This document shows positions 3,908 through 27,303 of a stretch of 37,677 bases of DNA, piece after piece. Positions within the stretch are counted from its first letter, which is position 1. Each line of letters begins with the position of its first letter. The DNA comes from Lenisia limosa (lineage: Eukaryota; Protista; Breviatea), in contig LPNZ01011378.1 of the NCBI GenBank assembly GCA_001655205.1, positions 1 through 37,677 of the forward strand, in the 5' to 3' direction. The notes below the pieces were generated by a model. It saw nothing but the letters and a program-made list of their open reading frames with translations, searched no databases and had not been told where the DNA came from. The translations under genes were made by a program, and so were the position numbers.

Positions 3908-6074
3908 TTACTTGTTTGCAGGAGCCTGGATTTTGAGGCTGAGTTGGTACAGCCGCTCTGAGGCCTTGTTCATGGACTGGAGCGGTGAAAAGCCCTTTCA
4001 ATAAAGATATCACATTAATACGATGTCACTTAATTGGTTGACCACAACATCCCTCCCTCCCACCTCTTTTTCGAAATCGTGCCGTCGGAGGAATCGGCCT
4101 AATGGAATTGTGACCGACACCGAATAGTGGACTTTCTACATTTGGTGAGCTTACAAAAATTGCTGAATGCAATTGGAAAGCTGGTCTTTTACATTCTAAA
4201 TTTAGAGTTTGAAATGGAAATTAGCACTGATATGGATATAATAAACAAATGAGTTTCCTCTTGAAGACCTGATGGAGCTTTATATCCTCAATGATTTTGT
4301 AGTACAGTCTCCGCTTGTTGATGTTGATTAATCCTTGGAGACGGTTGGGGTTGCCTGGGTTGGATTAAGCATGAAATTTTAGACAGATTAAAATCAGACC
4401 AGTAAATTTGTTGAGTGGTCATTGTTATTTACCCTGAGACCTTCAGTGATTGAGGTGAGGTCGGAAAGGTACAGTCCAACGTAGGGCACTGCAGGGTGGT
4501 GTCGGCTGCGTTGTAAGAAAGAGGGATTTGGTAATATTTATTGATGTGGGAATGTTTGATTGCCAGTGAAAACTATCTTGGCCTGAAGGGAATTCATATT
4601 CTAAAGTCCAAATATCATGAAATTGTGCTGGTTTTTTACTTCAAATGTTGTTGAAAATGGGCCCACTTTTTGGCAAGCTCTTGTCGGTAGTTTTTAAATG
4701 AAGACATGGGGTGCATCAAGACTTCAATTTCAGAAAGAATCTAAATCGTAAGCAGATAAAGACCACATTGGAAATACACATGTTAATGTTTTGAATTTTC
4801 ATCTAGTCTAATTTCAATCCCTTTTCATCTTGAATTACAAACCGCACCTCAAGTGTGTCCTTTTTGAGAGGTGCTGTTTTCAACCTTGTAACGGCTGAGT
4901 TGTTGATAGATGCATAGATCACCATAAGTGACTGGAAGTTCCTACAATATAAAGGCCAATAGTTTGCCTTTAAAATGATAAGGTTGTATTATCTAAAATA
5001 GCATATCGTATAATTACTTATCGAGATGTATATATCAATAAATATACTCTATCATAAACATAAGCTTTTGTTTGATTAAAATAATTAAGTGTCAGTTTGG
5101 GAGTAATGAGAATTGAGGCTTTCTTGGAATAAAATGATAATTAGGTCTGTTTGAACAACTGGACAAGTTCTTAAAATATCAATACTCTAAAGCTAAAGTA
5201 GCATTGTCTTATATTTGAATCGAGATTTGGTGCTGTTAGATCTTACCTGAGATGTATCAACTCGGAGGCCACAGACACAAGACGGCTAATTACAGCACCT
5301 CTTTCTCGCGGACCAGGTTGATTGATCACCATGTCCATAACCTACTAGTTAACATGTTCGTCTGTTGGCAAACACTGTGATATTATTGATTTTCTATAAT
5401 CTGTGTGAATATAAACTTGTGGTTGATTTACCTATATAAATGAAAACATAGCTTCTTTGTTATTGTATAACCAGTTAGTTATAGTTATGACTCAAAGAGA
5501 GGTGTTTCAAACTCTCTACTGAGGCTTTTCGGTCCCAACCATCCCACCCAGAGCGACACTTGGTTGAACTGTTGAACGCTCTCGTAAACGTTTGGAGCTT
5601 GTAAGCGGAAATCTCGTGACCAATCCGGTTGGAGCAGCTCGTGGGACTAATGGGTGAGGAAAGAAGCAGTATTGAGGGATTATACAGTATACTAAATATG
5701 AATAGGCAAGGTAAATTGTTAAGGGCCTAAAACTGCTTGAAGTGTTGAAGAAAATATGGGAAAGAGTGTTATTGTCTTGTAAATGAGATTTGAGGGACGT
5801 TAAATGAAACGAATATATAAAACAATGTATACATACTGTAGTTCTTCAATATATGAGCGTATATGTAGAGAGATCAACTTGTCAAGCATGGTATGATTTG
5901 GTGACAAGTCATGTTTGAATACCTGAGATTGAGGCCAATGTATTAACACATAAAGATTTCCAGCCACCTCAATTCGACAAAAGAAGTCGTGATCCACTCT
6001 TGTGAGGGAGATTGCGATTTCCTTGGCTGACATTGCCTCAAAAGTCCGTTGCATTGACCCCCCGGCCCCTCCAG
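3908..6074 (-). other. CDC25-type RasGEF catalytic domain of the giant gene
   Basis: SAKEIAISLTRVDHDFFCRIE|SHELL...APNV...FNQVSLW|VMDMVI...RERGAVISRLVSVASELIHLR|NFQSLMVIYASINNSAVTRLK...SFKNYR...AVPYVGLYLSDLTSITEG|NP...LINInKRR...ERLYQLSLKIQAPANK*. Confidence 0.96.
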
Positions 6075-9000
6075 CTAAAAAGTCGGATTCCGGTTGGCCT
6101 ATATTGTATTCCATAACTAGCTCTAGTTTCAAAGCAAAATAACCAAATCAAACACTGTTTTTATGGGTACTGCGTTTTGTTGTAAATGAATTCAAAAAGG
6201 TCTCATTCACAAGTGCTTTTATCAATTGCGTTATCAAAATATTTAAAATGACTTGTTGATCAATTATCACAAATCAGCATAAATAAAATGAAAATATAAC
6301 CAATATCAAGGAATAACATCAATTATCTCATATTTTATTCAAAAAATGGTTATCATAGGTGGTGTGGTCTAACCAAAGTTGTCGTCAAAGAAAAACGATT
6401 CATTGCCGGTGCAATATCTATATGGTTAAAAGGCGGCTGTGGCTAAATGATATTTAAGAACCTGAATTACAACTCTGGGAACCCCTAATTACTTTGAATG
6501 ATTGTCCATGATAAGACTCGAGGACTGTTTGACTCCGTTTGTAGTGTTACTCCGCATGGATCTTCTCTGGTCGGTTAGTAATTTGTTTATGTTATCATAC
6601 ATCAAAGTGTGTCATTGAAATGTGTCGATATCAAATGTTTCATTTATAATTTTCTTGTTCTGGTTTGTTTTTATATTTCATTGATAAATTCCTAGTTTTG
6701 AAAGGAAGAAAAAAAAAGATACGTGTCATTAAATGAAAATATTGACATTTCTATTCATCCCACTTTGTCCTTAATATTTCCGTCTTGGTCTACAGGAAGA
6801 TAGTCCAACCGAATGTCCTAAGAATGGGGTTAGTTTTCGGATAATAGTAGATGACAGACGATAAGATTGTTACTGTGTATTAATTTTATAGTTTCGCTGG
6901 AAGCGGAGACAGATGTATAGATTTATTAAAATGTTACTTTAAGAGAAGATAAGGTAATACATCCTAGAATGCTATGAGAAAGTGGATTCAGTCTTCTTCG
7001 ATATTGCCATTTTGTCATGTTCTTACTCGATATTGCCATTTTGTCATGTTTATCTCCCTCCGATCAGCCTACTTTATCGAAGTCCAAGTCCCAAACGTAA
7101 TCATCCTGACCCGGTATGGAGGTGCCATGGTTGGGCCGTGACAGAAAGAGGGTATACATCATGGATTCAGCCCTTCAAAACAGTAAGAAGCAGAAACTGA
7201 ACATGATATGTGCTAAAGTGTATAATCCAAGAAAATGTTGAGTGAGTGGAATCTGAAATTCTCACATTTCAGAACAACCCAAACCCCTTATCCTCATATC
7301 TTCCCCTCCTTCTTCCAGGATAAGGGTATCCAAGAGGTGGAAAGGATATGGTTTTATCAAACATATTATTAAAGATAATAGTGCCTTATCTGCAAACTAA
7401 CCCAGTTAAAATTATTTAATTATTAAATCTTGGTATCACAATTACGCATAAACAAATAGCAGAAATAAACTAACACATAACAGTGATGTAATTTGATAAA
7501 TGTAATTAATATTTCTACCAGCTTTTCTGTGTATTTCTATTTTATTGCAAGCATATCAGTATCATGAAATATATAATATAACTCACAACCTTGTGCCTAC
7601 ATTGTAAGATCGATCTTGTTTTGAAGCTGTTTAATCAGCTCAGAGACTTTAGTATCCGTTGAAATCTGAGAAATATATCAGAGCAGTATTAAGAAGGATA
7701 GAGAGTAAGATAAATATAATTAAATTCGAGCGAGTTTGTAAAATTTCTAATTGTAATTGAAATATTTAAACAATATTTTTTTTTTGATATCTTGATTTGA
7801 ATTGGAGTTTGTTTTCACTTTATTAATAGCTGAAATAGTGTTCCATTTTAGTTACTTGACATTCCAACAGGCCAACTTTAATCGTGCGATAGCCGTGGAT
7901 TTCGGTGAGGAAAACTCGAACCTGTTATGTTATTTTCAAAGCATAAGAGCTAAAAGAAAGTCGCATAGTATCTTCTGATTATTTGTGAGCTTCTATACAA
8001 CAGAATAACAATTATTAAAATTCAAATTAAGGGTATTGTTAATGTAATGTTAACATTAATAAGTATATACAATATTATATAGAATTTATAAAAAGGCTTT
8101 AGTCATTGGACAAACCAATTTAGTGGGCAGGTCACAAATCACTGGCTGGCTACTTTGCTGATGCAGGACTTTACTCGCTGTCATACGGAGGGACTGGACA
8201 AAAGTTTTCGGAATCACACAATCTGGGGGGAGGTATTATTACAATTTGCGGTCTCACTGTTGGGAGGTATTTGAGAAAAGTTGTTATTCAAGGAGTAATT
8301 TCACTAATATATGTGTCTACGACCAAGAATAGGACAGTCACTTGTACACTAACAGAAGATCGAATAATATTGAATCTTGATATGGAGTGACAACCAGCCT
8401 TGCAAACCCTCGTCATCAAGCTCCCTTTCAATTGTGTCAATGAAGGAATGCACCTTATCCAAAGTTCTGAAATATTACAATAAATATAGTAATAAACGGG
8501 TTAAACCTTATAATATATGATGACAACACTAAGATATATTAAATATCTCACATTTAGTAAAAAGATTCCTAAATAAAAGATAATGTGTGAGTATCAATTA
8601 CTTAAAATCCTTTTAAAATCAAAGTGATCTAATAAGTGATCTAAGTGATCCCTCATAGTAAAATCCTTACACCGCCCACCCATATGAGAAGTCAGCGTAG
8701 TTAAAGTTGGCCATCCACCACTCGAGAACACAGAGAATTCGGGCCTTCAGATTGTTGAAATCCTCGTCACTATCTTTGGGTGGTGGCGTGGAGTATCTGG
8801 ATATGGAGTGAAAGTGGAGGAGAAAGAAATTCATTGTGAAAAAGGAAGTAAAATCAAGAGTAATTAGAGGTGAAAATGCAAAATCATACTATACTAGCTG
8901 TTTATATCATAGATAAGAATGAAAAATGACACAAGAGTTCTTAGACCACATTATTACAGTGAATTTCCAAGAAAGAGATCATGAGCTGTCAGAACACGGA

Positions 9001-12000
9001 AAAATTCTTCTTATTTCCCAAGAGTTATATGAAATCAATGGCACCTTTCACAAAACTCCAGCATTTTGGATAAGAAGATTGCACTTCTTTATTATTTATT
9101 AGTAACTTAATTAAACGAAATCCCACAAACAGTTCAATGAGCTTTGTAAGGAATATCTTTGACGTGGTGTAAGTCGGCAGGGTTGAAATTAGCACCTTAC
9201 AGATGTCTAAACCATTATATGCAAAATAAAAGCCTCTTAGTAATATGGTTTGCATTGATAACTTTCCCAACTTTATCCCCAGTTCAAAATATTGAGGAGT
9301 TTACCACTAAATTTTATGCCAGCACATCAGGGCTAACTTTTACAAGATTCGCAAGCATACCAATGCTAACTTTTTATCCCCTCTCATACAATATTACATA
9401 TGATTTTGCATAATGCTCAAATATCACCCCTGCAAACTATTCAAGGGCTCACGGACGGTCAAATGAATGATTTCGTTCAAACTGGCGGCTGAGACGCTGA
9501 TGTGTGGAAGGCCCCCATAGTTCCTGAAAAGGTTGGAAATAATGGCACATTACCATAGTTATTCTGTCATGGATTTTTTGAAAATACACTTACACCCCGT
9601 TATCTCAATTTAGGTTAGACTCCCATAGGAACAACAGCGACATACTTTTCGGTTTTTCTCTCAACGTTGAATACTTCATGACTTATTTTGCGAGAGGCAG
9701 GGTCCCAAATTGGAGAGTCGCCTGTTATTGTTAAGTAAATGGTCCACGAGGTTTAATGTGTGAGTGTTTCGTTATTAACAACTTTGATATTCTATTTTTT
9801 CAGTCTATCCTTACATTGGGTACTATTGGAATTAATCTTGAATGTGTAAGTCACCTATGAATTTTTTTCATAAACAAGAGCAAATGCCAATTTTCATTGA
9901 ACAAATTGTAGCGTACCAGTGTTACAGGCGTCTTCTTCACTCTCACACTCCATGACGTTTGATGATGGAATTGACATTTCCACTGACATCAATAAAAACT
10001 GAAATCAACGCTGTTTAAGGGCAATATTCTATGATATAATGGTATATTGATATGTATTATATTGGTTCATCAAAGAAATATTGTCACCAAAATCTATCCA
10101 TAAACTATGATCTCAACAATAGTAATCAATTTGATGAATTTTGCATATCATGCACACCATGCATGCATAAGCCAACATCTATCCAAGTTTTGGAAAAGTC
10201 AGATTCCTAATAAAATTATTTTCCTTGCTTCCAATTTTTACACTATATCCCTTTCTATCTCATACTGAACGCATGAGTCGGTGACAACACAGTCGTTTGG
10301 TTGTCAAGTGGCTTGGAAAGACTGAACTTAAGGAGACTGTCAATCTACAGGATGAATAGAATGCGAAGGTTTTTAAGATCGTATATCCCCACCCAACCAC
10401 CAGTTCACATTATGCCACATACAAATGCTAATGACTAAGCAGCACCCCTTCGAACAACTGGCCATATCCCTTCTGCCATTATAATCTCTCCCAAAACATT
10501 CTCCACACCAAGTTACTGAAGTCGCCGAGCTGCTCGTCTAGTCTATCCTGGTTTCTGACGTCGGCTGGTGTGTTTATGACTGCGTTGGTGCTGTTACAGA
10601 TGGCTGCAATACCTATAGGGTGAGAAATGATGGATAAATCAGTACATGGATGAATGACAGAACTGCGTGTAATAAATTGTGTTGAGATTATTCAAAAATT
10701 TGAAATTTCATTGTCTGTTATAGAATTCGAAAGTCATTTTGTTTTCTTTTAGTAAAGTGTTCAAATAACAAAAACAATATTTCATCCTTTATTTCCGCAC
10801 TCAATGATTGTGATTCCACTCTATCCACCGACTGGAGAATACACGGTCATTGAATAATTCCAATAAAGCTCCGATACGTGTAAGTTCCAGACTGACTGCA
10901 GTTGAGGTTTGCTGAGAATGGTGGTGGGTAAAGATGGACAAGTGTATGTGATGGAATAGGGGGGGGGGGGGNNNNNNNNNNNNNNNNNNNNNNNNNNNNN
11001 NNNNNNNNNNNNNNNNNNNNNNNNNNNNNNNNNNNNNNNNNNNNNNNNNNNNNNNNNNNNNNNNCAATCCAAAATAATTACATGGATTTGCACTAAATGG
11101 CGAATTTAACACGAAAGCACGAATTATGCTTATTGCTTGATAATTGACTCATTATTCAAGGGTTTTTGTTGATAAATCATAATACTAGATCAGGTTTATG
11201 ATTGATAAATCTATGATATTGTTTCAACTTGAATGTTGCGTACCTTCTTGAGCTTATTAAAGCAACTGATAAACAGTTTGAAGCGATGTTGAGTCTCATT
11301 TGGTTCTAAAGGTGACTTCGCAAGGTCTACTTGAGACCCCACTGAACACTCAGCTTTGCTTGAATTACAGCTTAGTATCTGCAAGGTAATTAGATGTGTA
11401 TATACACAGTAATATCATAAGGGCGACAGTTCAGTATTCATGGGCAAGTTGTTGTAAAGTTAATGATATCGCTTTGCATTGTGTGGCCATAGTCGATAAA
11501 ACAAATATTTCGTATTTAAGCAAACACATGATCAAAGTGCACAAGAATGTCAAAACACATCTATTCATATTAAAATTCTAGGGAAATGTATTTCATGTAA
11601 GAACAATGAGAACAAATGCAAAGTTAAGTTGATAGTGAAATGATGTAATATTTTGAAAGCTTAAAGGGAAGTTGAATGACTAGGGATTGACTAAATGTGG
11701 AATCATGGATTGAATAAGTGGAGATAATAGACAATGTACATTGCCTTATTACCAGAGGTTGTACTTACATTTGGTGAATCGGGGTGTTCTTCTGTCATAC
11801 TCATTTCGCTCTAACTGGTCAAGATTTGCCGAAGTTTTCAATGATGGTATTTTGTGTTTAACTAGGTCAGAATTGACAATCAAGGTCCAACATTGGTTCT
11901 TCGGAGACCATGTTAACTACTTCTCTTTCTCACCTTTGAAGTGTCAATTTGGTCCAGAGCCGTCTATAATGTCAAATTCTGTGTTGTGATGGTTACCATA

Positions 12001-15000
12001 TTGCTGTCTAAAAAATTTACCATTCATTTTTCTCATGTAAATCACCTCCTATCCCCACGCACATGGTATTGGAACTGTCTGCTCTCCAGGCCCGCAATGG
12101 CGTCCAGTGCCACCTGTGAGATAATTCGCGCCTGTTCTTCTCCCTCCACCGTTCCGTCATTGTCGAGGATTGTGTTGAAATCGATTTTACAGACGGGAGC
12201 GCTGGGGGTCATGGCTAAAGCTTGTTAGGGTGATCATCCAAGACATATAATAATACCAAACTCTATGGGAAGGTTTCATAGCTTGGTGGTATTCACTTGG
12301 TGTACAGGTAGTAGAATGAAGAATGGGATCGGGCAGATATATTATAAAAAAAATGGTACGCATTATATATATGATATACTATATAGATATACATCATATA
12401 CTAAAACGCACTACTATTATGAAAATGATATTGGGAGACCACTTTAGTAAGCCTTTTTAGGATTATGACTTTAGTATTATGATATGATACATCATGACAA
12501 GTCAATCTACCCTTTTTACGTTGGTCATCAGAGGGGTCACAAATGTCATTATCTTCGTAGTTGTTGTCTTCATCATCTTCATTAAGGGCATTATCAATGG
12601 ACACCCTGCTATGTGTTAATAACACATACTATGAACGATAAAATACACATACTTCAAATTGATGATTTATATAATATCATATAGCTATATGAAAACAATG
12701 GAAAACTCCCATAAGAATTTTCTGATAATATGCAACAGTAATTTCACGATAGAAACAATTAGTATCTACTCATGTCTTACTCTCAGAACAAGTTAGATTA
12801 CCGCACCGCCCGACTTATCAATGATATTGAGGTCGAACAGTGAGGGGTGGCGTGATGCGTGAGAGCTCTCTGACAACAAATGCCGAATCACATTTGACTC
12901 CACTCCCACATCTAAGTTGGTGAATGTTGCAATGGAATATATGAAAACATAAATAGAGTATATTATACATATCAATATAGTGTATACAAACATAAACATG
13001 TATATACAATGTATACATATGCATGAACGGCTAAACCCTATAAAACCCTATAAATCCCGATATTTTTATAAATTTTNNNNNNNNNNNNNNNNNNNNNNNN
13101 NNNNNNNNNNNNNNNNNNNNNNNNNNNNNNNNNNNNNNNNNNNNNNNNNNNNNNNNNNNNNNNNNNNNNNNNNNNNNNNNNNNNNNNNNNNNNNNNNNNN
13201 NNNNNNNNNNNNNNNNNNNNNNNNNNNNNNNNNNNNNNNNNNNNNNNNNNNNNNNNNNNNNNNNNNNNNNNNNNNNNNNNNNNNNNNNNNNNNNNNNNNN
13301 NNNNNNNNNNNNNNNNNNNNNNNNNNNNNNNNNNNNNNNNNNNNNNATTAGAAACAGAAAGTCAGACCCCCAAAACCCTTAAAATGGTCGAATCAGATTT
13401 TGAAATGACGTTAGTAGGCTCCAGATATGAAGCCTGATATTTTGACTGAAATTACCAACAAAGGAATATTCGAGAATTTTGGTAATTTCAGTCAAAATGT
13501 CAGGCTTCATATCTGGAGCCTACTAACGTCATTATAAGTTTTAAAGGGCTGTCAGAAGAGAAAAGGCTGTTTTTGACTTTCAAAGCCGCCCTATTTTCCT
13601 ATTAGGCAAGTAAGGAACTTTCTGGAACTTTCGGGGTCCGAATCACAAAAATATCGCAAAAGTTATGAAACTTCCACAAACTTAATTCCAAATTTGAGAA
13701 CATCCCAAAATAACAAAAAGAGCAAGATTTTTGAACTGATTATTTCAGAAAATGACCTCGGGTGCCCGGCTCGGAGTGCCATTTTTTCTGCAATTTGTGT
13801 GAAATTTTACATTTGGTCATTATTTCGTATTTTTATTGGTTTTTATTGATGTCCAAGTTTTTTGAGGGAAATTATTCAAAAAGTTTATAAAAATATCGGG
13901 ATTTATAGGGGGTTTAGCCGTTCATGCATATGTGATGTTGTATTCAATAAGAGTGAATTAAACAAAAAATTAAATCACCGATATTAGTCACCTTTCCCAC
14001 ACACCTACAACTAAGGCATCCTTGAAGTCCCATAGAGCGTACTGAAACTGACGCGCTGTTGTCCTGTTGAATGATAAAGGGTGTCATAACAAGAATAACG
14101 CAGTGGAGAAAAGTAGTGTTTGTTTATTTGTAGAGAATAAAACTTGTGAATGTGATAATACATGGTCGAGAAGTGGTGAACGACACAAGCTGAGACGTTT
14201 GTTGGTGTATATTTTAATAAAACCAAAGTATTATTCCTATAATATATCCATTATTATCAAGAAAACATCTCATATTTCTTCCAATTGTATAGTGTTGTTT
14301 TATTGATACTAGACCTACCTGCAGTCCACTAGGTGCTCGGTTTGCTGCAAGCCCTGACTGAATTCATCGGAATGTTCTAAAATCAATCAAATTATTAAGT
14401 TTTCATAAATTATATATTAACACAATTATTGCCCGTTTTGGACAACAATGTAGCTAAAATTAAACAACCCACGCCAAGGGAAGAGAAGTTTGATGATTGA
14501 CTTGGTAACGTCCTCCAGCATGTTCAAATTGGCATCGCAGATACTAATGTCTCCCTGTACGTAGCATTCGGGCGCGACCTGCAATGATAAAGATAAGTGT
14601 TAGTGCTGTTTTACATGTTCATTTTGAAATTTTCACAAATGGTACTTTAAGTGTTAAAAGCGATGAATAACTACATTTGAAGCGTTGATGAGTTGGAATA
14701 AATGCACTTTTAGGATGAAATCAGTTATGAAATATCCTTCTATAAAATCTCTAAGGCGGACTTTGAACTCGCTAGGTAGAATGAGACGATCAGCCGTTTG
14801 GCTGATCTTGGCGCATCGGCATCCAATCAACGCTGAGGAATTTAGTAATATTTCTTTAGAAATATTTCTACATATCAGAAGTTTACACATTCCTATATAT
14901 AAGAAATACTCCCATTGCAAGGGAATAAAGCAAGTTATTCACTCCCCTCCAACTTGTAATATCGTTCATGAGTAAGGAAGTGATTTGGGCGGTCTTGTTG

Positions 15001-18000: not shown

Positions 18001-21000
18001 CCCCCCTCCACTTTTATCACAACATCCCTACTTTTATCTCCACCCTCAATCTCCCCACCTTGATCTCCCTCACGCCGCCAACGCTCCAGGTGCCGATGGT
18101 AATGAGCTTTTTGTTGGCCGCAACAAAGTCATATTTTGTCGTTTTGTGGCCTACTTAGAATTAATCTAGTTGGTAGCCTTAAAGTGCATAGTCCCTTCAT
18201 GTTTTTTTTTGTTTTGGGAATATAATTATATCTAATTGATCTTCTAGAGTAATGTTTATACTTGACAAATCATACATAGTTGTCTTTAATGGTTCAATCT
18301 CAGAATAAACAGTAACAATATTCTCCATCACAAAAGACTCCGTATACATTTAATTTAATCTTAAAATTTTGGAATTTTTTTTCATATTACAGTTTAAGGA
18401 ATAGTTAAAGCTAAATAACTTCCTTAAACCGTTTCTAATAGCAAACAAATTCAAAAGATGAAACCATCTGGCAACAAAAACCTATACCTTGAACAATAAA
18501 GATGTCGGAGTGATCAGGTGTCACCTCCCGCTTAACCTAAAACATTATTACCAGCGGAAACACTTGTGTTCTCAATGATAACAAATACTATATGATTTAC
18601 TATACACTAAAGCTTGTAGCATGATTCACCTCCAGATTAAGCATCACAAAAAAGACGTCCCACGTGGCCTAACTTTTACACAGCGTTTATTCTATAGTAT
18701 CAAGTATAAAAATATGATCCAGTCACACTTCTCACAAACTCAACATTACCAAAACTGGGACCTAAAGCAGTATGCACCACCACCCTGAGGTCTTACAATT
18801 TATAACGCGTACCCACCTTTTAATACTAGTAAGATATAACTTCGTTTCTATGCCCGAAACAAACCTCCCTTGCCCTGATGGCACCTCTCTTGCCCTGATG
18901 GCACACCTCCCTTGCCCTGATGGCACACCTCCCTTGCCCTGATGTCAAACCTCCCTTGCCCTGATGGCAAACACATCAGCTTTGATACTTGACGTTGTAG
19001 CGGTGGGAGAACCTGCTGTCAACTAAAATATTAAAGTTATGATTGAGATTCTTTGATTTGAACAATAAGATTGTCAGAGGTACTATTACTTAATTCTTAG
19101 TTAATAAAGAAGCAATTTCTTATTGCTGGCGCTGTAAAATAAGCAATTCAAATAAGCAGAGCACTAGTAGAATTTCCAAACTTAACAAAGATTTAAACTT
19201 GAACTTTACCCCGTCTACCAGAGGGAAAACTGCAGGACGTGCGTGGCTGCCCAACGATGATAAGTTGTATGAAAAGACGTTGGAACCTAAAAATCATAGG
19301 TCAGAGAAAAAGTCGGCTTTAATCTTGAGAATTTATGAGATTACTTTAAGGACGTTTTTCTGTGTTTTGCCAGTGATAATTCTAAACTTCAAATCATTTT
19401 TCAAGACTAACCGCAATAAGTTCAGTAATTTCAAGAAGATAAACCCACTCACCAGTGACAATAAACACGGTATTGAGAGATTCAGCTATGTGAATGTCCC
19501 GAATATGCGACGTTGTAAGGCATCGGATTAATCTTTGGTGTTTTCCTATTGAGATGAACAGCTCCAAAAGAGTTGTGCATTATTATACCAGAATTTGTCA
19601 CAAATCGACTATCCTTCAATAACCAAAAAATAAAAGGACTATACAAAGGATATACCATATATTGTAAATTTCAGATATTGGGGATGTCATATATTATTGA
19701 GTTTAGGCCCAATTTACCAGCCAGCGGAGAGAACAGATACAGCCCATTCTCTGCTGCAAAGACGTAACAACGGTCATGTCCTTGGTAAGTGAGTCTTGAA
19801 GACAGAACATTTATTTGAGTGATTCATTTAGCAACACAGCACTATAGAATGTGATTTTGAATTACTAACATATAACTTCAAGTGAGTTTTCAAAAAAACG
19901 AGAAGTGTATTTACAAAGCCACAAATCTGAAAAATGAACCATTATTAATGCCACTTGAGTAACATAGCAGCTTATCAAGTATTTGAGAAATGAGTGATAT
20001 TCAATAAGATCTGGCTCAAAAAGACAGCACCTAATGAAAAGCCTTATATTATCATGTGACTTTTGATTTTAGAATAACGCAGCACCAACCTTGTCGATAC
20101 CATGGCTTGAGAGCCAAAATCAAGAGAGGAAACGAGAGTTCTTTGCTAGGCTCAAATACCTTGATTCTCATTTGTTGCATCACAAATTTAATGCTTCATT
20201 AGGTGGCTATTATTGTTTTTTTAGTTTTAAAGCATTGAATTTGTGATGCAATAATTTTCATTTCATTTAATTATAATTTTAATTAAATGAAATGTCCAAA
20301 TTCTTTTCAAAAACCAAATTATAATCGAACATTCATAACTTCACGTACATTTCCCAAGTTTAATGCTCAGTAAAATGAGTATTGTAATTGTCAAATTTTG
20401 AACATAACCGAAAATGTTGTAAAAATTATTCAGCTTGTATCAAAAACAAAAAAAATAATGACTGTTTTCTATCAGACTGAATCCTCTAACACCATATGCC
20501 CAGTTACCTGTACGGTTGAGGCCAATTCAAACTTCAAGGCGCGCTCTCTACTTACTAAAGCTTTTGCTAAAGATGCCTCGGACGGTTCAATCTGAAAGGT
20601 AACAATTTTCCATATGGCAATAAGCAAAATCGAAACGGTTGTGATGGTTTATTGAATCATTTGTTTGGTATAAACGTGAAGTAGACAATTATATTCTGTT
20701 GTTGTCAGTCACGGACACACCATTTTGCCCTTCTCCTTGCTTTTGCCATTGTCACTGTGAATAGAACTGATGAGGTACTCCACTGTGTTCATCATCTTCA
20801 TTCGGAAAGCTGGTGCAGTGTAGGTTGCCCTCTCACCGTTTACTGTGTTATTAAGGGGACGTTACCTTGGGATGTTTAAAACGTGTTTCGGAAGATGCAA
20901 AGAGATTGAAAGAGATTTTCAAAGATAATTAAAAAGAGATTTACAAAGAGATTTACAAAGATATAATGATGTTTCAAGAGTTTTACAAAAGAATTTACAG

Positions 21001-24000
21001 GGAAGTCTGTGCCACATTTATTGGAGATGATAAAGTACCTCAAAATGTGTTAAAACCCCCATACCCTTGGAATTAGGATAACTGATCTGAAAAATCGTAT
21101 ACACATTCTAGCCCTTACCAAGTCACATTCTAGCTCTTACCAAGTCACATTCTAGCCCTTATACCAAGTTTGGCGATGAGAAAGTCTGAGAAGTCACTGT
21201 TTTTAGACTTCGAGAACAGCGGGATTTTGGGCAGTGAAGGGCCAAATGCTGGCACATTGTCTTTGACTGCGACAGCTACTCTGGGGAGGGGGGGTGATGC
21301 AAGCTTGGGATTAATGAATCAAGCTATTTATTGGTGGTGGTTGGGGTCAAATTCTAATTGCATTTGGGTATGGGTGGCTAAATGGGTACTAGTGGGTTAA
21401 TGAAGGAAATAATCATGAGAGAGGGAGAGATTGGAAGTGGTGAGATAAATTCATGAAGGAATAACACAAATTCCGATCTCCACTCTGGTAGGGGTGTAAA
21501 GCTATTTGTGGATTAATATTAAAATAAATCTCTGAAATTAATTTGAAAACACAAGGTGAAATTGATAGAGGCAAATCCAACCTGTACCGCTTCACTCCGT
21601 CCTTCCCCTCTTCAGGCCGGACAACAACAAACAAGTCTAAAATGTTGTTGCAAATATGAGATTTTCGTATATCTATTTAATAGTATTGTCTTCATAATCA
21701 TTGGAAGATTTGCTGCAAAAAGAAGACCAATTGAAAATTCATTTCCTTTTAGTTATCAAATGTTCGATGCAAATAGTGCACGATTTAATGAAAAGCAAAT
21801 CCAATTGGGAATAAAGTTGCCGATAATCAAATGGTAGCATCATTTAATCATGAATATGTTGCATTCAACAGTTTTTTTAATATTATGCAAAGAATAAACC
21901 CTACGATTGAATTGGGAATGGATAATTGTTGGATCAAATGGTGTCAAACAGTCTTCATCCTGAGAATGGGTTGAAAGATTCTCATAATAAAAACTACTAC
22001 AAATGATGATTATGAGAAAAATTTTCTACTTTAACACGTTTTACAACTTGATTGAAATCTATAACAGAATGATAAATGTGAATCACTTCAAGAAAGGCCA
22101 TTTCTTTTCTCATCTGATATACCGAGAACTTGCGACCAACCTGATATACAACAACACAAATATCATTCCCGATGTGCCGTTTCCTCTCAATCTACAAGTG
22201 TAACAATATCAATTCAAATAAGAACAAAGAGAAGTTTTAGACAACGCAATCAATACGCTCAATACAACCTAAGAAGAATGTTTTGTTGCATACTAACATC
22301 AACCATCTGCATAGTGGTCAGTGAGAATTGAAATTCAGTGGTATAAAATAGTGAGATAACTCAAAATGGATAAATTCATTGTAACAAGGAAAACCGTTTA
22401 ATATAAGGGATGAAAACATAGGTTTTATTTCATCCACAGAGTGGAACCAACCTGCTGGAGGTCAATGGAGTTGTAAGGCAGCAAGGGGGCGACATGGGAC
22501 ATGATCTCGTAACCTGACCACTCCATATAAACCGATTCGGTTCCGGTTTGAAGAGATTCTGGAGGTGAAAATTGAAACAACTCAAGCTGTCCAAATGTGT
22601 TCTCATACAGCCCTTTCCACCTTTATTATCCAGTCCAGCACGGAATTTCGACCAGCCGAGCAGGGAAATCCGATCACCTAAATCGTAACTTTCTAGTTTT
22701 AATTACTCTCAACTCCCAGTATAGTTAATTAGTCGCCTAAGATACAATATAAACCCCCCATGTCTCCCAGGTCTATGAAGTTGCCAAAATTGATTTATAA
22801 AAACAAAATCTTCACAATATTAATTTTGCTGAAATAAATTTCATCAAAATAGTTAAGAAACACTGATACAGAGTTGTACAAAGTAACACACATATTTATT
22901 TTATACATCAGAATGAAAACCAAAATATACTACAATCCTATTAAGGAACACTCCTTAGAAATACCCAATAATTATACAACTGTACAAAAAATCCCCGAAA
23001 GTTTCAACGCCTACCCATGAATGTAAGAAACTGGTTGAAAGCCATTGTGTAGTTCACATTCGCCACGTTCCTGGTAAGTAATAGATTATCAAATCATGTC
23101 ACTTTTGGGTTCATTGCCATATTCTACGTGATATGACACGACATTATCTAGTTTCATAGTTTGATCAACAAGTCTCAATAATTCTTTGATACACTCCTGA
23201 TGAACCCTCCTGATATCTTCATCATTTCAACATGAAAGTCGGTCATATTATCATATCACTCATAGATTAGGGCCAACATTTACTACTGATAACAAGTATG
23301 ATATGATATATCACGTTTCTTCTAAAGGTTCTTCGTTCATTATTAGAAAGATAACTCATCCTCCCATCACTTCACCATCTATATTTTTAATCCTCCAAAC
23401 TGTTCTTCGTTCTTCCCATCCGCATTGTAGGCTGCAGCCAGAGTGTTATTAGCGTTCATGAGATCAAGAGGCTTCATTGTCTGTGTGAATCGCTTGCCTC
23501 CACAAGAGGTCACAATGTCAACCTGATTGTGACTATTTATCAAATTGTGGCAATAATGTGTTTGAATACCTTATTTATGTCGCGTATAAATCATAATAAA
23601 AACAGCCCATTCACCTCTTTCGAGTCAATTCGCGACCCATTGAGACAGTTATTGTATATCTGTTCCTCCTCCGTCTGGCCATCATGTTGCCACACCACAC
23701 CGAACTTGTAGGCGGGGTAGGTCTGAAGAGATAAATCTAGAATTTATGTCTGTGGTCCTTATTGTTACGATATTAGCACAAATATTAATTACAATCAGGC
23801 GTTTTACATCAGATGTAACCAACCGCAGTATTATTGCAATTATTATCCCATATTCTCAATAATTTAATTTTCAACATTATTGCAAATTCAGATCTCGTAC
23901 TTGCATTTCTTCAAGTCGTAGAAGAGAGTCAAAGATCTGACTGTTCGTAGCGCTGGTGACTTTTGAGACGATGATGCCGAAGTAGTATGACAGCAGGTAG

Positions 24001-27000
24001 GCGGGGCTCTGTTTAGCTGTAATTGGAGCACACATTCGGTCGGTACCCTGATGGAAGTATTAATGCAGAATAATCAAATTTTCATATTTTGTAGCAAGAC
24101 AGTGTCAATTATATCTTCTCCAGTATTTTTGAAGTAAAGGGAAGCCAAGAATATGGGGAAGGGCTTGACTGTTTTCAGATATCAGTTGTGATTAGAAATT
24201 TATGTAAATACTTTTTTCTTATATTATTTTTGATGTATGGGAATTCCAAATGAAAACTCTACTAATAATGATTTTGAATATATCATAAGATGGTTTGAAA
24301 ATACTATTTTGCCAACGCCATTCATGCTGTACTAGCAATTGGTGAGTATCCTTCAATAACATCATAGCTGTCATATCAACCCACCACACAAGTCTGTTAA
24401 CTCCCCATAAGTCTGATAAGTTGCCCCTCACCGCACGAGTCCAGAGAATGAGCCGCAGTTGTGGGGATAAGTCTTCCTTGAGAACCGATAAGACAAACTC
24501 TTCATCAGAGTACTTGTCTTTTCCCAGGTAGTTTGTGTGTGCTGTAAATGTTACAATTGAACGGATTTATAAGACTGGTGAATTTTATGATGTGTTTCTT
24601 GACGTGCTTCATATTCAAACATAGCTTTTTACATATTGAAATAATAACTCTAAACTGTTACCTCCCACGTCTGTCAATGAAGTGTTGGGCATACCAGGCG
24701 CAGCTGAACCTGGAATACACCAGTTAGGAATAAAGAAAAAGGAGACGCAAGGGTAATTAATCCCCCCAAAATCTTCCGCTCCCCAAGACTGAAACCCCCA
24801 ACCCCTCACCCCACTCACTCGGCATTTTCCACCACTGCAGCAGACCCGAAGGAACTCTGTAAATGGGCCTGTCCGAGTTAATAGCAGAATATACCCCCAC
24901 GTCGTGAGTGTATAAAAATACTACTGAATCACATGTACATGTATACATTTATATTATTCAAATATAGATGTCACCCCACTTCATTTGTCGATCTGCCGTC
25001 CTCAATTCTCCAGCCTTCGACAGGTTTAATCAGAGTTGGCTGCTTCAACTCCCTATACTGTGATTAAAGCGTTTTTTTACAAATATTTTGAAATCAAACC
25101 ACCCTTCTATCAAAACCTAATTTACATTCTTTTCAAATTAAAAAAGTATAGAAACTGTAGCCAATTCAATCTCTAAAAATACAGTTAAGAAGATTGATCA
25201 TATATAGTATATTGAATTTTACTCCCCAAAATTAGTCACGTTTGTGAAAGCCAAACCAAATAACCATATTTTCCTCACAAGAAAATCTTTTTGTAGTTCT
25301 GGCGGTCAATTGCCCAACACACTACGTTGTTGCTTGCCTTGATTGATAAAGGAAAATATTCTATCATCGATAGAGTTAGACATTCAAGTCATCAAATTCC
25401 ACTGTAAGTAGGTTTTTATCTTTTTACCTACATTCATCCACTGTATTTCGAAGAGTTTATTTGTTGGGAATTATTGGTGGTGTTTTTCTGAGATCATAGT
25501 AATATCATTCCTATGAAAGCTACTCTCAAGTGTTCCTCACGAGATTTAGGTTTCAAATATAATATTTATTAGAGCTATATTCCAAGTGTTCCCACTGTAA
25601 CAGTAGCCGAGCGCATCATAGGTGCATTCAACGAGCGTTCACCAAAAGAATCTCCAGGACCTAAGGTGTGCGATGAATGATAATTGTGGTGTAATGAATT
25701 TTGTTTGGTGATATTTGTATTACAATTTAAAACAAAAGACATAATTAAAAGCAGAAAGAGTGAATAAGACTGACACCCCTCAAGAATGGGTATCAAATTA
25801 TCTAACATTTATACCAATATCTTAACGTTTATACCAATATCTTAACATTTATACCAATATCTAAACATTGCCAAATGGTCTTGTGAGTTAACACCCTCAA
25901 AGCTCGTTAAATGGTCACAATAACATTATGTATTGTTACGAGATTGAAATTTGGGGTGATACTGTTTTAATAAACATTGGCTATTTCAGTGTTCCTGAAT
26001 TGACGCTTCAAATAATTAGAGGTTAAAATCAATATTGGATTACCAAAACATTCATAATTGTCACCGTGTAGACGATCCCCTTTGAAACCTGCAGTGGTGG
26101 TGTTTGGCCTCCCCCACCAGCCCTGAAGACTTCTCTTGGAACGCCCTTGTCAACACTGACGGTAACGATGCAGTCTCTGAGACAATTAAAGAGCTAAATA
26201 CTGCAGACAGTTGGTACCGTGTCATGACACTGTTCTCGGGCCATAACTCTATACATCCACCATACCCTTGCTCCAAGAGGAAAAACTTATCTCCAATTGT
26301 ACCTAACACGTTAGAATAACTAACAATTTGAAAATGATGACCTACTTTGGAAGAGTATAACAGATTTTCTGTTGATGCTAAATGAAATGTACACATAAAT
26401 GGCTATTTGATACTTAGCATTTTATTGTATTATAATCTGAACTTTATTGAACCTGCCCAACCTTGTCTGATAAGAACAGAACCGGGACTAAAGTCTAGTC
26501 TGTTCATTGCTGCGAAAAGCTCCTCAATCTAATATGTAAGGAATGCGGAATATCACGAATGATTTCATCTTCACATTTAACAAATCCAATCAATACTTAT
26601 AATATTAATAAACAAATGAAAGCCACTCCAGGTTGAAACGGTTCAAACAGAGATTACCATGAGGTTTGTTAATTTGGTATGGACAATAATGGTATTCGGA
26701 ATCCCTTACTTATTCAAACATTCAACCAAATAAAAATATTTACCATTAATGAATAAGGTGTAGAAAATAAACGACAAACCTGTTCATCCTGCAAGTCCGC
26801 AAAGAACTTGTTGCGTTTGATCGACTAGAGAGATGAGGGCATTCCAAGCGGGGAAGTCCACAATACCTGATAGAGTAGCTGTTTTAGTTTCTCATCCATT
26901 TTGTGAGAGTTCTGCATGGCGAGAAAACCTTGAAGAGGACTTAAGCCTCAGGACAAATGCGGAAGTTCCACTTATTGAGAGTTTATTTGAATATTATACT

Positions 27001-27130
27001 AGTATATGGTGTTACGTAATGTGATATCAACTTTAAGAGTAAAATAGTGATGTTTACTGCGATTAAGTGCTGGTTTTGGTTTCCCTGGACGCCGGCGGGT
27101 ATATTCTCGGACAACTTCCTTATATTTCAT
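3908..27130 (-). CDS. Giant multidomain signalling protein: cNMP-binding, RapGAP, CNH, unknown region, REM, RA-like, CDC25 RasGEF (~75-80 exons; 5' end tentative)
   Basis: Manual exon chain with canonical GT-AG sites and compatible phases from 26824 to the stop TAA at 3908-3910; domain motifs are listed in the separate features. Least certain parts: start (ATG 27130 tentative), 18600-19010, 16600-16700 and 11400-11900, each of which has at least one phase-compatible path. Confidence 0.8.
6998..7050. repeat. Intronic direct duplication of TCGATATTGCCATTTTGTCATGTT (period 29)
   Basis: Identical 24-mers at 6998-7021 and 7027-7050. Confidence 0.9.
7073..7921 (-). other. RA/ubiquitin-like domain between REM and CDC25 domains
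   Basis: VRVFLTEIHGYRTIK|ISTDTKVSELIKQLQNKIDLTM|AESMMYTLFL matches the RA-fold pattern (beta-beta-alpha-beta). Confidence 0.7.
8408..9721 (-). other. REM (RasGEF N-terminal) domain of the giant gene
   Basis: GDSPIW...ISVSAASLNEIIHLT...ICKVLISTLPTYTTSKIFLTKLIELYSTPPP...LKARILCVLEWWMANFNYADFSYGTLDKVHSFI follows the REM consensus. Confidence 0.85.
13016..13932. mobile_element. MITE-like non-autonomous DNA element in an intron of the giant gene
   Basis: Left end CATATGCATGAACGGCTAAACCC...TATAAATCCCGATATTTTTATAAA (13016-13072) is the reverse complement of the right end (13884-13932), apart from an ~8-nt indel. The palindromic CATATG at both ends contains the possible target-site duplication. No transposase ORF is visible, though 13077-13347 is N. 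Confidence 0.8.
13404..13533. repeat. Near-perfect 55-bp inverted repeat (hairpin) with a 20-nt spacer inside the MITE-like element
   Basis: 13404-13458 aatgacgttagtaggctccagatatgaagcctgatattttgactgaaattaccaa versus the reverse complement of 13479-13533: one mismatch. Confidence 0.95.
16174..19794 (-). other. CNH (citron homology) beta-propeller domain of the giant gene
   Basis: YVFAAENGLYLF; IRDIHIAESLNTVFIVTGSNVFSYNL; FVAANKKLITIGTW; FLLCYNTAIGILVDSLGKPTRDFVFKWNAVPLGIVAVSQGFVEVRTLINGKLLQ; ESRSEFFISRFSQDYKHVVHK|IAF. These match the typical CNH blade motifs. Confidence 0.85.
18861..18968. repeat. 22-bp minisatellite, ~5 copies (ACACCTCCCTTGCCCTGATGGC)
   Basis: Directly visible tandem units with 1-3 differences each. 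Confidence 0.95.
20898..21000. repeat. Degenerate ~12-bp repeat (AAAGAGATTTAC) in an intron
   Basis: Multiple imperfect aaagagattt(a/t)c units. Confidence 0.7.
21102..21169. repeat. 22-bp tandem repeat x3 (CACATTCTAGCCCTTACCAAGT) overlapping a 5' splice site
   Basis: Units at 21102-21123, 21124-21145 and 21146-21169 (last has a 2-nt insertion). The RapGAP exon ends at 21165, inside the last unit. Confidence 0.95.
25279..26824 (-). other. Cyclic-nucleotide-binding (CNB) domain of the giant gene
   Basis: Six exons give SIKRNKFFADLQDEQ|IEELFAAMNRLDFSPGSVLIRQ|GTIGDKFFLLEQG|DCIVTVSVDKGVPREVFRA|GPGDSFGERSLNAPMMRSATVT|ASNNVVCWAIDRQNYKKIFL. This is a PKA-R/PKG-type CNB with phosphate-binding cassette FGE...RSAT (exon 25596-25660). 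Confidence 0.93.
25801..25868. repeat. 20-bp intronic tandem repeat, ~3.4 copies (CTTAACATTTATACCAATAT)
   Basis: Visible period of 20. Confidence 0.9.
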
Positions 27131-27303
27131 GAGATCCCGGGAAGTTATGGTTTATGTTTATTTGTTGCTGGGGAAGTAACTCAGCATGTTTGCACTATCA
27201 GATCAGTAAAAGTGATTAAAACCGTCACAAAATGTTTCTTAATTAATGAAATAGTACAAGAATTATAAATATAGTTACATTACTTTGCAAAATACCGCTT
27301 GAG
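27131..27303. promoter_or_regulatory. Putative short divergent (bidirectional) promoter between the giant gene and the secreted propeller gene
   Basis: Head-to-head arrangement. The length depends on the tentative ATG at 27130; no specific promoter motifs were identified. Confidence 0.4.

What the first reader, a model, noticed from the sequence alone, without database searches (positions are those of the whole stretch)
3908..27130. Single giant gene fusing a cNMP sensor, a Rap-GAP, a CNH propeller and a REM-RA-CDC25 GEF (GAP and GEF in one protein)
Seen: all domains lie on the minus strand in one exon chain with compatible phases, with no forced stop and no intergenic-sized break between them. 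The key junction is strong: the last strands of the CNH domain (SRSEFFISRFSQDYKHVVHK|IAF) run from exon 16380-16463 into exon 16174-16236. That exon begins the phase-consistent chain through the MITE-bearing intron (phase 1 to phase 1) to the GEF stop. Established: CNB...REM-RA-CDC25 is the Epac/RAPGEF layout and RapGAP+CNH is the GARNL3 layout. Inference: this looks like an Epac-like GEF with a GARNL3-like module placed between the CNB and REM domains. It could act as a cyclic-nucleotide-gated switch that turns off Rap while turning on Ras/Rap, or cycles one GTPase locally. I know of no characterised protein with this architecture.
Basis: partly seen in the sequence, partly recalled or inferred. 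Interest (0 to 1): 0.92.

Follow-up and report, generated by a model that had tools for sequence, protein, structure and literature searches.

The report
Possible fused Rap-GAP and Ras-GEF gene
A minus-strand stretch of an unidentified, intron-rich eukaryote encodes a cyclic-nucleotide sensor, a Rap "off-switch" with a CNH propeller, and a Ras-family "on-switch" in a row. They probably, but not provably, form one very long gene, a combination I found described nowhere.

Summary
Four of the five claimed domain types are on the minus strand in the stated order: a cNMP-binding domain with an intact phosphate-binding cassette, a Rap-GAP with its dimerisation region and catalytic Asn, the C-terminal blades of a GARNL3-type CNH, and CDC25. 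The REM match is weak. The RA domain was not detected.

CNB–RapGAP–CNH as one gene is well supported: exons lie at most about 230 nt apart and phases fit.

The GAP–GEF join rests on gene structure only. GC-rich, ORF-bearing exons with G-rich donors continue through the 6-kb linker. The "MITE intron" is one ~920-nt inverted-repeat element holding the 13077–13346 gap. Without it, the flanking exons lie ~174 nt apart and are phase compatible.

The 10972–11064 gap is bridged by a DNA contig and lies near the 3' end of a putative intron. The second gap is not bridged.

No RNA run holds the locus. No close relative exists. None of 240 listed Rap-GAP proteins carries RasGEF or cNMP domains.

My odds:
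- one gene, about 0.6
- two tandem genes split at 12.0–10.9 kb, about 0.2
- split at the transposon, or a mis-scaffold, about 0.12

If it is one gene, it is a new architecture built from known domains.

The parts
27128..27130 (-).
   Evidence: An ATG opens the stop-free piece 27002-27151. Not tested further. My chaining runs preferred ATGs at 27498 or 27595, so the 5' end is undetermined.
24975..26302 (-). Cyclic-nucleotide-binding domain. Approximate exons: 26302-26266 (GDKFFLLEQG), ~25733-25596 (phosphate-binding cassette FGERSLNAPMMRSATV), 25337-25279, 25052-24975
   Evidence: Pfam cNMP_binding E 0.013. PDB cGMP-dependent kinase CNB-B E 2.5e-4, with alignment over 43 residues. Exon boundaries read by eye.
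24656..24856 (-). Two short bridging exons (24856-24810, 24709-24656) between CNB and the Rap-GAP N-terminal region
   Evidence: Strong Y-rich acceptors, G-tract donors (GTGAGGGG, GTAACA) and matching phases 2>1, 1>2, 1>2.
23901..24541 (-). Rap-GAP N-terminal / dimerisation region (exons 24541-24432, 24047-23901)
   Evidence: GARNL3 HMM positions 155-275, E 6.6e-11 on the rough spliced model. Piece hit at hmm 157-196.
20721..23722 (-). Rap-GAP catalytic domain. About nine exons: 23722-23648, 23070-23015, 22694-22621, 22558-22452, 22191-22141 (KRHIGND, Asn thumb), 21959-21905, 21636-21582, 21280-21165, 20842-20721
   Evidence: Pfam Rap_GAP on three pieces. tblastn colinear with many Rap-GAPs. 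HMM 4e-46. 37-44% identity to the nearest proteins. A 62-nt intron at 22620-22559.
16380..20650 (-). CNH domain. The C-terminal blades are secure (17578-17448, 17400-17289, 17183-17127, 16952-16875, probably 16463-16380). The N-terminal half is only suggested, e.g. 19794-19718 'YVFAAENGLYLF'
   Evidence: Pfam CNH pieces at E 0.028 and 0.26, colinear. GARNL3 HMM 781-825 at 4.6e-8. blastp to animal GARNL3 CNH C-terminus, E down to about 7e-7. The N-terminal half was not detected by any profile.
14005..16236 (-). Linker part A. Candidate exons: 16236-16174, 15897-15823, 15633-15554, 15075-14943 (or -14954), 14578-14473, 14376-14319, 14063-14005
   Evidence: GC islands of 46-54%. For the six with correct coordinates, the proposed frame is best by stop-independent codon score; 14376-14319 was scored with coordinates off by a base. 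Most splice-site scores are at the 63rd-98th percentile, with the 14376 acceptor weak at the 36th. Read by eye. No Pfam match.
13015..13933 (.). High-copy transposable element. Terminal inverted repeats at 13015-13076 and 13880-13933, a nested 55-nt palindromic MITE at 13404-13533, and the unbridged assembly gap 13077-13346 inside it
   Evidence: Inverted repeats I1-I3. Read depth of about 360-1000 against 34-38, with contigs ending at 13046 and restarting near 13881. Copies from elsewhere diverge at 13012-13017. No clean target-site duplication.
12059..12911 (-). Linker part B. Exon 12911-12807 and exon 12214-12063/12059 (MTPSAPVCKIDF...QFQYH). A possible acidic exon 12605-12511 does not fit the phase
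   Evidence: GC 50-55% and best codon frame. Donors GTGCGG and GTGCGTGGGG at the 86th-97th percentile. Read by eye. Neither Pfam nor a metagenome scan found relatives.
10912..12058 (-). The 1.1-kb interval with only weak exon candidates (11963-11934; 11810-11769 with ATG and a GTAAGT donor; 11378-11244). It contains gap 10972-11064 and a C13 tract (10959-10971) just upstream of acceptors at 10911/10895. This is the main place where two genes could be separated
   Evidence: Three-frame reading. Gap bridged by a DNA contig with 69 letters between. The weak exons fail or barely pass the codon-frame test. C-tracts before acceptors are also seen at 21294 and 8230.
10509..10911 (-). Exons after the gap: 10911/10895-10845/10829 (TAVSLELTRIGALLELFND) and 10612-10509. 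The local structure is unresolved
   Evidence: Acceptor percentiles of 0.93-0.98. Best-site phases do not all fit. No Pfam match.
8408..10345 (-). REM (RasGEF_N) region. The best piece is 8888/8796-8680, followed by 8466-8408
   Evidence: Pfam RasGEF_N E 0.046, profile positions 33-94. PDB and metagenome searches found nothing. Weak, but colinear with CDC25.
6100..8400 (-). Interval between REM and CDC25, claimed as RA. It has GC islands near 8200, 7200 and 6600
   Evidence: No Pfam match on any piece tried. RA is not verified. The spliced sequence could not be submitted to domain tools.
4400..6068 (-). CDC25 (RasGEF) catalytic domain. Exons about 6068-5968, 5646-5540, 4941-4843, 4505-4441
   Evidence: Pfam RasGEF on three colinear pieces (profile 20-53, 83-106, 144-169). 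Weak PDB matches to RalGPS1 and RasGRF1. Motif PAVPYVGLYLSDLTSITEG.
3908..4354 (-). C-terminal exons and stop codon (terminal exon about 3976-3908)
   Evidence: Chaining runs end at 3908, or at 3715 in the over-fitted run. Not otherwise tested.

Best explanation
One long minus-strand gene of about 60-80 small exons, from ~27.1 kb to 3.9 kb, encodes roughly 2,000 residues or more. The domain order is CNB, Rap-GAP (with dimerisation region), GARNL3-type CNH, a ~400-residue linker without recognisable domains, REM, an unassigned insert, and CDC25.

Shown:
- The domains are present, in this order, on this strand.
- CNB-RapGAP-CNH form a tight exon chain.
- The catalytic and ligand motifs are intact: the PBC Glu/Arg, the Asn of KRHIGND, and the CDC25 hairpin motif.

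Inferred:
- The linker exons join the two halves in one mRNA.

Most likely mode of action, all inferred from the known families:
- The protein is a cyclic-nucleotide-responsive, bifunctional regulator of Rap/Ras-family GTPases.
- The CNB sits directly before the GAP. As in Epac, PKA and PKG, ligand binding would relieve or impose an intramolecular block, here most plausibly on the GAP module.
- The CNH propeller, which binds Rap2-GTP in MAP4K-type kinases, would dock the protein on an active GTPase.
- The CDC25 domain would load GTP on a second GTPase, or on the same one elsewhere. One polypeptide would then couple switching one GTPase off to switching another on.
For: - Domains.
- CNB to GAP continuity: five exons at most 230 nt apart, strong sites, all phases fit.
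- Linker: GC-rich islands every 300-500 nt through 16.4-12.0 kb. In 13 of 16 candidate exons the proposed frame is best by a stop-independent codon score trained outside the linker. Donors are of the same G-rich type as those in the homology-supported Rap-GAP introns.
- Transposon interval: the 1.1-kb interval 14004-12912 is about 84% one inverted-repeat transposon. Without it the interval is ~174 nt, an ordinary intron size here (62-384 nt) and very short for a 3' UTR, intergenic spacer, promoter and 5' UTR together.
- Exon 14063-14005 has a donor at the 97th percentile and phase 1. Exon 12911-12807 starts in phase 2 and has no in-frame ATG.
- Gap 1 is bridged. It sits beside a C13 tract and strong acceptors, as at other intron 3' ends in this gene.
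- Prior (my reasoning, not a tool result): chance adjacency of a Rap-GAP gene and a Ras-GEF gene on one strand is improbable. First-stage notes also report other unusual signalling fusions in this genome, including another CNB-RapGAP (unchecked).
Against: - No transcript evidence. No RNA run holds either half, and the one RNA run of the same study lays nothing on the junction.
- No ortholog or paralog with this architecture. There were no relatives above ~62% identity on the best exon, none of 240 listed Rap-GAP proteins has RasGEF, RasGEF_N or cNMP, and metagenome scans were blank.
- Gap 13077-13346 at the critical junction is not bridged and has no clean target-site duplication.
- The acceptor of exon 12911 is only at the 62nd percentile.
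- The 12.06-10.91 kb interval has only weak exons and allows a coherent two-gene parse.
- The objective best-site phase test gave only 7 of 12 (my binomial estimate p about 0.07).
- My self-trained chain score in the linker is only twice that of the opposite strand (6.5 against 3.0 per kb).
- Exon structure at 10.9-10.6 kb is unresolved.
Confidence: 0.6

Rival explanations
1. There are two tandem genes on the minus strand, split in the 12.06-10.91 kb interval. The first is a CNB-RapGAP-CNH protein (GARNL3-like with a long tail). It ends by read-through of exon 12214-12059 into the stop at 12044-12042 (...QFQYHVRGDRR*). The second is a separate REM-CDC25 GEF that starts at the ATG of exon 11810-11769 (MSMTEEHPDSPN, canonical GTAAGT donor).
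For: This interval is the only ~1.1-kb stretch of unique sequence without convincing exons; its candidates fail or barely pass the codon-frame test. The ATG exon has a canonical donor and is phase compatible with the next exon. Animal GARNL3 proteins end about 150-250 residues after CNH and carry no GEF. No listed Rap-GAP protein carries a RasGEF domain.
Against: The distance from the stop (12042) to the ATG (11802) is only ~240 nt and contains several upstream ATGs. Exon 12214-12059 carries two adjacent G-rich donors at the 86th-93rd percentile, which a terminal exon does not need. Chance adjacency of a Rap-GAP and a Ras-GEF on one strand is unlikely (my reasoning).
Confidence: 0.2
2. There are two genes separated at the transposon (14.0-12.9 kb). 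The GAP gene ends by read-through after exon 14063-14005 (...DALVVGVWER*, stop near 13990). The GEF gene starts at or after 12999. The split is either ancestral or caused by the insertion.
For: The junction coincides with a high-copy element and an unbridged gap. The post-CNH tail up to 14005 is about 240-260 residues, similar to GARNL3 tails. The acceptor of exon 12911 is mediocre. An ATG-initiated ORF (12999-12793) runs into that exon.
Against: Outside the element only ~174 nt separate the two exons. The donor at 14005 is at the 97th percentile and its phase matches exon 12911. The ATG ORF's N-terminus is translated TA-rich microsatellite sequence. Exon 12911-12807 itself has no ATG.
Confidence: 0.07
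3. This is a scaffolding artefact. The two contigs ending in copies of the same high-copy element were wrongly joined, so the GAP half and the GEF half are not neighbours.
For: Independent DNA contigs stop at 13046 and restart near 13881. Any two contigs ending in this element would show inverted terminal repeats facing a gap. No target-site duplication was found.
Against: Same strand, matching phase, and both contig ends lying in mid-gene, with a donor on one side and an acceptor without ATG on the other, are unlikely together under a random join. The unique flanks are only ~920 nt apart, which I take to be within reach of ordinary read pairs.
Confidence: 0.05
4. The locus, or its GEF half or linker, is a decaying pseudogene or is not expressed, so no such protein is made.
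For: No RNA coverage in the only RNA run of the study. The N-terminal half of CNH and the RA domain are undetectable. There is a transposon insertion.
Against: The catalytic and ligand motifs are intact. No frame-breaking stop is forced within the homology-supported exons. The RNA run is small, about 46 Mb of contigs.
Confidence: 0.08

Closest known systems
GARNL3 (GTPase-activating Rap/Ran-GAP domain-like protein 3) of animals, and similar CNH-bearing Rap-GAPs in unnamed metagenomic or metaclust records
   Same: Rap-GAP dimerisation region, Rap-GAP catalytic domain, then CNH, in the same order. A family HMM matches all three parts. The CNH C-terminus is 29-47% identical.
   Different: Only 37-44% identical in the Rap-GAP domain. 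It has an N-terminal cNMP-binding domain that none of the listed GARNL3 proteins carries. It is probably continued by a REM-CDC25 GEF instead of ending after a short tail.
Epac / RAPGEF3-4 and PDZ-GEF (CNB-REM-RA-CDC25 Rap exchange factors)
   Same: It contains a CNB, a REM-like region and a CDC25 domain on one strand. A cyclic nucleotide is the likely input.
   Different: The CNB is separated from REM by a complete Rap-GAP, a CNH and a linker, so the Epac auto-inhibitory CNB-lid/REM geometry is absent. No DEP was found and RA was not detected. The weak best structural-sequence matches of CDC25 exons are RalGPS1 and RasGRF1, not Epac.
Dictyostelium GbpD/RasGEFU and GbpC/RasGEFT (cGMP-binding RasGEF proteins)
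   Same: These are protist proteins that combine cNMP-binding domains with a RasGEF (PMC1273635).
   Different: There the cNMP domains lie after the GEF, and there is no Rap-GAP or CNH (PMC1273635).
GEF+GAP dual proteins: Dictyostelium RasGEFD and GflB, and yeast BEM2 (RasGEF-type domain plus RhoGAP)
   Same: They are a precedent for a CDC25-type domain and a GAP domain in one polypeptide that links two GTPase systems (PMC1273635, PMC4865317).
   Different: In those proteins the GAP is a RhoGAP acting on another GTPase family. A Rap-GAP with a RasGEF was not found in a 24-species survey (PMC3141262) or in my two listings.

Membership tests
GARNL3-like Rap-GAP | Rap-GAP catalytic domain with the catalytic Asn (KRHIGND) | tested here: met
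   Pfam Rap_GAP on three exons. HMM 4e-46. IERKRHIGNDICVVVYQ at 22191-22141.
GARNL3-like Rap-GAP | CNH domain C-terminal to the Rap-GAP | tested here: met
   The C-terminal blades match the GARNL3 HMM at 4.6e-8 and many GARNL3 proteins. Pfam CNH pieces are colinear. The N-terminal half was not detected.
GARNL3-like Rap-GAP | Rap-GAP dimerisation region N-terminal to the catalytic domain | tested here: met
   HMM positions 155-275, E 6.6e-11.
GARNL3-like Rap-GAP | No other catalytic or sensor domain; protein of about 950-1200 residues | tested here: not met
   A CNB domain lies in the same tight exon chain. A GEF probably follows. The listed GARNL3 proteins carry only PF21022, PF02145 and PF00780.
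Epac/RAPGEF | CNB directly followed by REM, so that the CNB lid contacts REM/CDC25 | tested here: not met
   About 15 kb of genome lies between CNB (26.3-25.0 kb) and REM (10.3-8.4 kb), encoding a Rap-GAP, a CNH and a linker.
Epac/RAPGEF | RA domain between REM and CDC25 | tested here: inconclusive
   No Pfam match on any single-exon piece. About 2.3 kb with GC islands lies there. The spliced sequence could not be submitted to domain tools.
Epac/RAPGEF | CDC25 domain with REM | tested here: met
   RasGEF on three colinear pieces. RasGEF_N is weak at E 0.046.
Epac/RAPGEF | GEF specificity for Rap | not testable with these tools
   Only weak exon-level matches, to RalGPS1 and RasGRF1.
cNMP-binding domain (PKA/PKG/Epac type) | Phosphate-binding cassette with conserved Gly-Glu and Arg-(Ser/Thr)-Ala | tested here: met
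   FGERSLNAPMMRSATV aligned to the PKG CNB-B cassette, E 2.5e-4.
Single-gene GAP-GEF fusion (the claim itself) | One mRNA spanning the CNH, linker and REM exons | not testable with these tools
   No RNA run holds the locus. There is only structural inference.

The most novel reading that the evidence does not exclude
The locus is one expressed gene whose product unites a functional cNMP sensor, a Rap-GAP with a GTPase-docking CNH propeller and a CDC25 exchange factor. It would be the first described Rap-GAP/Ras-GEF bifunctional protein, a second-messenger-gated device that switches one Ras-family GTPase off while switching another, or the same one elsewhere, on.
Probability: 0.5. Interest if true: 0.68.

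Novelty: new variant of a known kind. Interest (0 to 1): 0.52.

Why it matters
GAPs and GEFs for Ras-family GTPases are normally separate proteins. A 24-species survey found no Pfam domain shared between Rap-GAP and RasGEF architectures (PMC3141262). A natural polypeptide that carries both, with a cyclic-nucleotide sensor and a CNH docking module, would give a compact model for how on- and off-reactions are coupled in space. It would also be a template for engineered GTPase switches.

Even if the GEF turns out to be a separate gene, a CNB-RapGAP-CNH protein is a cyclic-nucleotide-linked relative of GARNL3. I did not find that combination among 240 listed Rap-GAP proteins. It suggests direct cAMP/cGMP control of Rap inactivation.

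Tried and rejected
- Representative-library search with the best Rap-GAP exon: 23 weak, mostly fragmentary hits and no ortholog.
- Contigs of those fragments: stand-alone Rap-GAPs, one from Acytostelium. No architecture information.
- Look-up of a window ORF: not on record.
- Protein atlas with a CDC25 exon: noise only.
- Two metagenome scans, with linker exon 12045-12224 and the REM piece: nothing.
- Profile search with an alignment of a long carrier plus window exons: it failed because the words were drawn from the carrier's N-terminus. Only 2 hits.
- RNA runs: none holds the locus.
- Self-trained exon-chaining program: it over-fitted with a mild intron penalty (115 exons) and under-called with a strong one. 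Its linker score is only twice that of the opposite strand, so I did not use it to decide between one and two genes.
- Target-site duplication at the transposon ends: none clean.
- Physarum as the source: considered because of homopolymer-flanked gaps and repeat-built introns (PMC4758236). The one Physarum transcript-derived Rap-GAP that came up is only ~55-60% identical on the conserved exons. The organism remains unidentified.
- Spliced protein models could not be given to Pfam, structure or homology tools, because there is no reference for a spliced sequence. RA, REM and whole-protein architecture were therefore not tested on the assembled protein.


Full report
**What the window is.** It is a ~36% GC eukaryotic scaffold with many short N gaps. 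Nine of the 12 gaps abut poly-G or poly-C tracts. Coding sequence is split into very small exons of about 30-160 nt. Introns are about 60-400 nt. Donors are G-rich (GTGAGGGG, GTGGAAAGGG, GTTGGT, GTGTGT) and acceptors are pyrimidine-rich or preceded by C-tracts. The organism is unknown. The nearest Rap-GAP proteins, from amoebozoans, other protists and animals, are all only 37-44% identical.

**Domains (observation).** Single stop-free pieces on the minus strand give the following.
- cNMP_binding: Pfam E 0.013. The same piece matches the CNB-B domain of cGMP-dependent kinase at E 2.5e-4 over 43 residues, with an intact cassette FGERSL...RSATV.
- Rap_GAP: three pieces at E 2e-6 to 1.5e-4.
- CNH: two colinear pieces at E 0.028 and 0.26.
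- RasGEF_N: one piece at E 0.046.
- RasGEF: three colinear pieces at E 1e-2 to 1e-4.

I built an HMM from 87 GARNL3-type proteins fetched. Its matches to minus-strand pieces are colinear from profile position 157 (24.5 kb) to 831 (16.87 kb). A rough spliced model scores 6.6e-11 for the dimerisation region, 4.3e-46 for Rap-GAP and 4.6e-8 for the CNH C-terminal blades. Dozens of animal GARNL3 proteins align to those blades at 29-47% identity. The catalytic Asn (KRHIGND) and the CDC25 hairpin motif are present. RA was not detected on any piece. The N-terminal half of CNH is only suggested by a motif. The linker has no Pfam match.

**The gaps.** An independent DNA contig bridges 10972-11064 with 69 letters between. 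On the minus strand the gap is followed by a C13 tract and, 48-64 nt further on, strong acceptors. This matches other intron 3' ends in this gene, so I read the gap as intronic.

Gap 13077-13346 is not bridged. Contigs stop at 13046 and resume near 13881, and depth rises from ~35 to about 360-1000. The block 13015-13933 has inverted terminal repeats (13015-13076 and 13880-13933) and a nested 55-nt palindrome. Copies elsewhere in the genome diverge at 13012-13017. It is therefore one high-copy transposable element with the gap inside it. I found no clean target-site duplication, so the scaffold join is plausible but unproven.

**CNB to GAP.** Reading the three frames, these exons follow each other at intervals of at most 230 nt, with good sites and matching phases: 25337-25279, 25052-24975, 24856-24810, 24709-24656 and 24541-24432. 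A first-stage note reports another CNB fused to a Rap-GAP elsewhere in this genome (unchecked). I consider CNB-RapGAP-CNH one gene.

**CNH to GEF.** After the last CNH exons come GC-rich (46-55%) ORF-bearing islands every 300-500 nt. They are:
- 16463-16380, 16236-16174, 15897-15823, 15633-15554, 15075-14943
- 14578-14473, 14376-14319, 14063-14005
- the transposon
- 12911-12807 and 12214-12063/12059
- a 1.1-kb interval with only weak candidates
- 10911/10895-10845/10829, 10612-10509, and then the REM region

With a codon model trained only outside the linker, and with stops ignored, the proposed frame is best in 13 of 16 candidate exons. There is some circularity, because the frames were first chosen by ORF. 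Splice-site scores from matrices trained outside the linker are mostly at the 60th-98th percentile, similar to the homology-supported Rap-GAP introns.

The key point is the "MITE intron". Outside the element, the donor after 14005 (97th percentile, phase 1) and the acceptor before 12911 (62nd percentile, phase 2, no in-frame ATG in the exon) are ~174 nt apart. That is an ordinary intron length here. It is hardly enough for a 3' UTR, spacer, promoter and 5' UTR.

**Why this is not proof.**
- A flexible chaining program always returns a phase-consistent chain.
- When I took the single best acceptor and donor of each island without regard to its neighbours, 7 of 12 junctions were compatible, against 4 expected. 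My binomial estimate is p about 0.07.
- My chain score in the linker is only twice that of the opposite strand.
- The interval 12.06-10.91 kb allows a coherent two-gene reading. Exon 12214-12059 can read through to a stop five or six codons later. Exon 11810-11769 offers ATG-MSMTEEHPDSPN with a canonical GTAAGT donor.
- Against that reading, only ~240 nt separate the stop and the ATG, and exon 12214-12059 has good G-rich donors.

**External evidence.** None could be obtained.
- No RNA run holds either half. The only RNA run of the same study lays nothing on 10.6-16.6 kb.
- The representative library has no relative above ~62% identity on the best exon.
- Metagenome scans were blank.
- Two listings of 120 Rap-GAP proteins each, covering 377-1199 and 977-3110 residues, show many architectures (LRR, Roc/Ras, DEP, RA, PH, LIM, PDZ, CNH). 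None has RasGEF, RasGEF_N or cNMP_binding. The second listing shows only 120 of 3,652 hits, so absence is not established.
- Literature: a 24-species survey states that Rap-GAP architectures share no Pfam domain with RasGEF ones (PMC3141262). The known GEF+GAP proteins (RasGEFD, BEM2, GflB) pair a CDC25-type domain with a RhoGAP (PMC1273635; PMC4865317).

**Verdict.** The single-gene interpretation is the best reading at about 0.6, helped by the transposon argument and by the improbability of chance adjacency. It remains untested.

The Epac analogy is weak. This looks like a CNB-bearing GARNL3-like Rap-GAP extended by a GEF. The mechanism is inferred from the families: a cyclic nucleotide acts on the adjacent GAP module, CNH docks on an active GTPase, and CDC25 activates a second GTPase. 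GEF specificity is unknown; the weak exon matches are to RalGPS1 and RasGRF1.

If real, it is a new architecture made of known domains. That is interesting to GTPase specialists but needs cDNA evidence first.

Noticed in passing
window 13015-13933 (nested 13404-13533): A high-copy DNA transposon with ~55-62-nt terminal inverted repeats. It carries a nested, near-perfect 55-nt palindromic MITE. Read depth is about 10-30 times that of unique sequence, and this copy breaks the assembly.
   Followed up: partly
window gaps at 774, 2538, 3464, 10972, 29395, 32537, 33598, 37299 and others: Nine of the 12 N gaps abut a G or C homopolymer run of about 5-16 letters. The gaps look like sequencing failures at homopolymers, often near intron ends, rather than missing genes.
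   Followed up: partly
window 27391-27504, minus strand: Upstream of the CNB exons, an ORF 'MMLDEQESTIAYNEGVGTTSDKRK' weakly resembles the start of a Rap-GAP domain (LLLEEQE..KFGV..GQT; tblastn E 4.5). It could be chance or a decayed duplicated exon.
   Followed up: no
window 27.7-30 kb and 0-3.9 kb: The coding-score maps suggest that neighbouring genes may lie mostly on the plus strand, with only ~0.7-0.9 kb of low-scoring sequence before the next gene upstream (27.3-28.2 kb). The genome appears gene-dense.
   Followed up: no
window 12511-12605, minus strand: An acidic ORF (NEDDEDNNYEDNDICDPSDDQRKK) has a good acceptor and donor and a good codon score. Its phase does not fit between the flanking exons. 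It may be an alternative exon, need a missed micro-exon, or be non-coding low complexity.
   Followed up: partly
P0143, P0149, P0150, P0155 (proteins fetched): Unnamed proteins from transcriptome and metagenome sources combine glutaredoxin, DEP, LRR and DUF547 domains with a C-terminal Rap-GAP. Others combine Roc/Ras, or RA plus LRR, with a Rap-GAP. Rap-GAP architectures appear far more varied outside the named animal families than within them.
   Followed up: no
window 5488-5646 (CDC25 exon): The best solved-structure match of this exon is RalGPS1 (E 0.21, weak). From memory, and not tested here, human RALGPS1 and GARNL3 are adjacent genes on 9q33. That is worth a synteny check as a possible echo of an old GEF-GAP linkage.
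   Followed up: no
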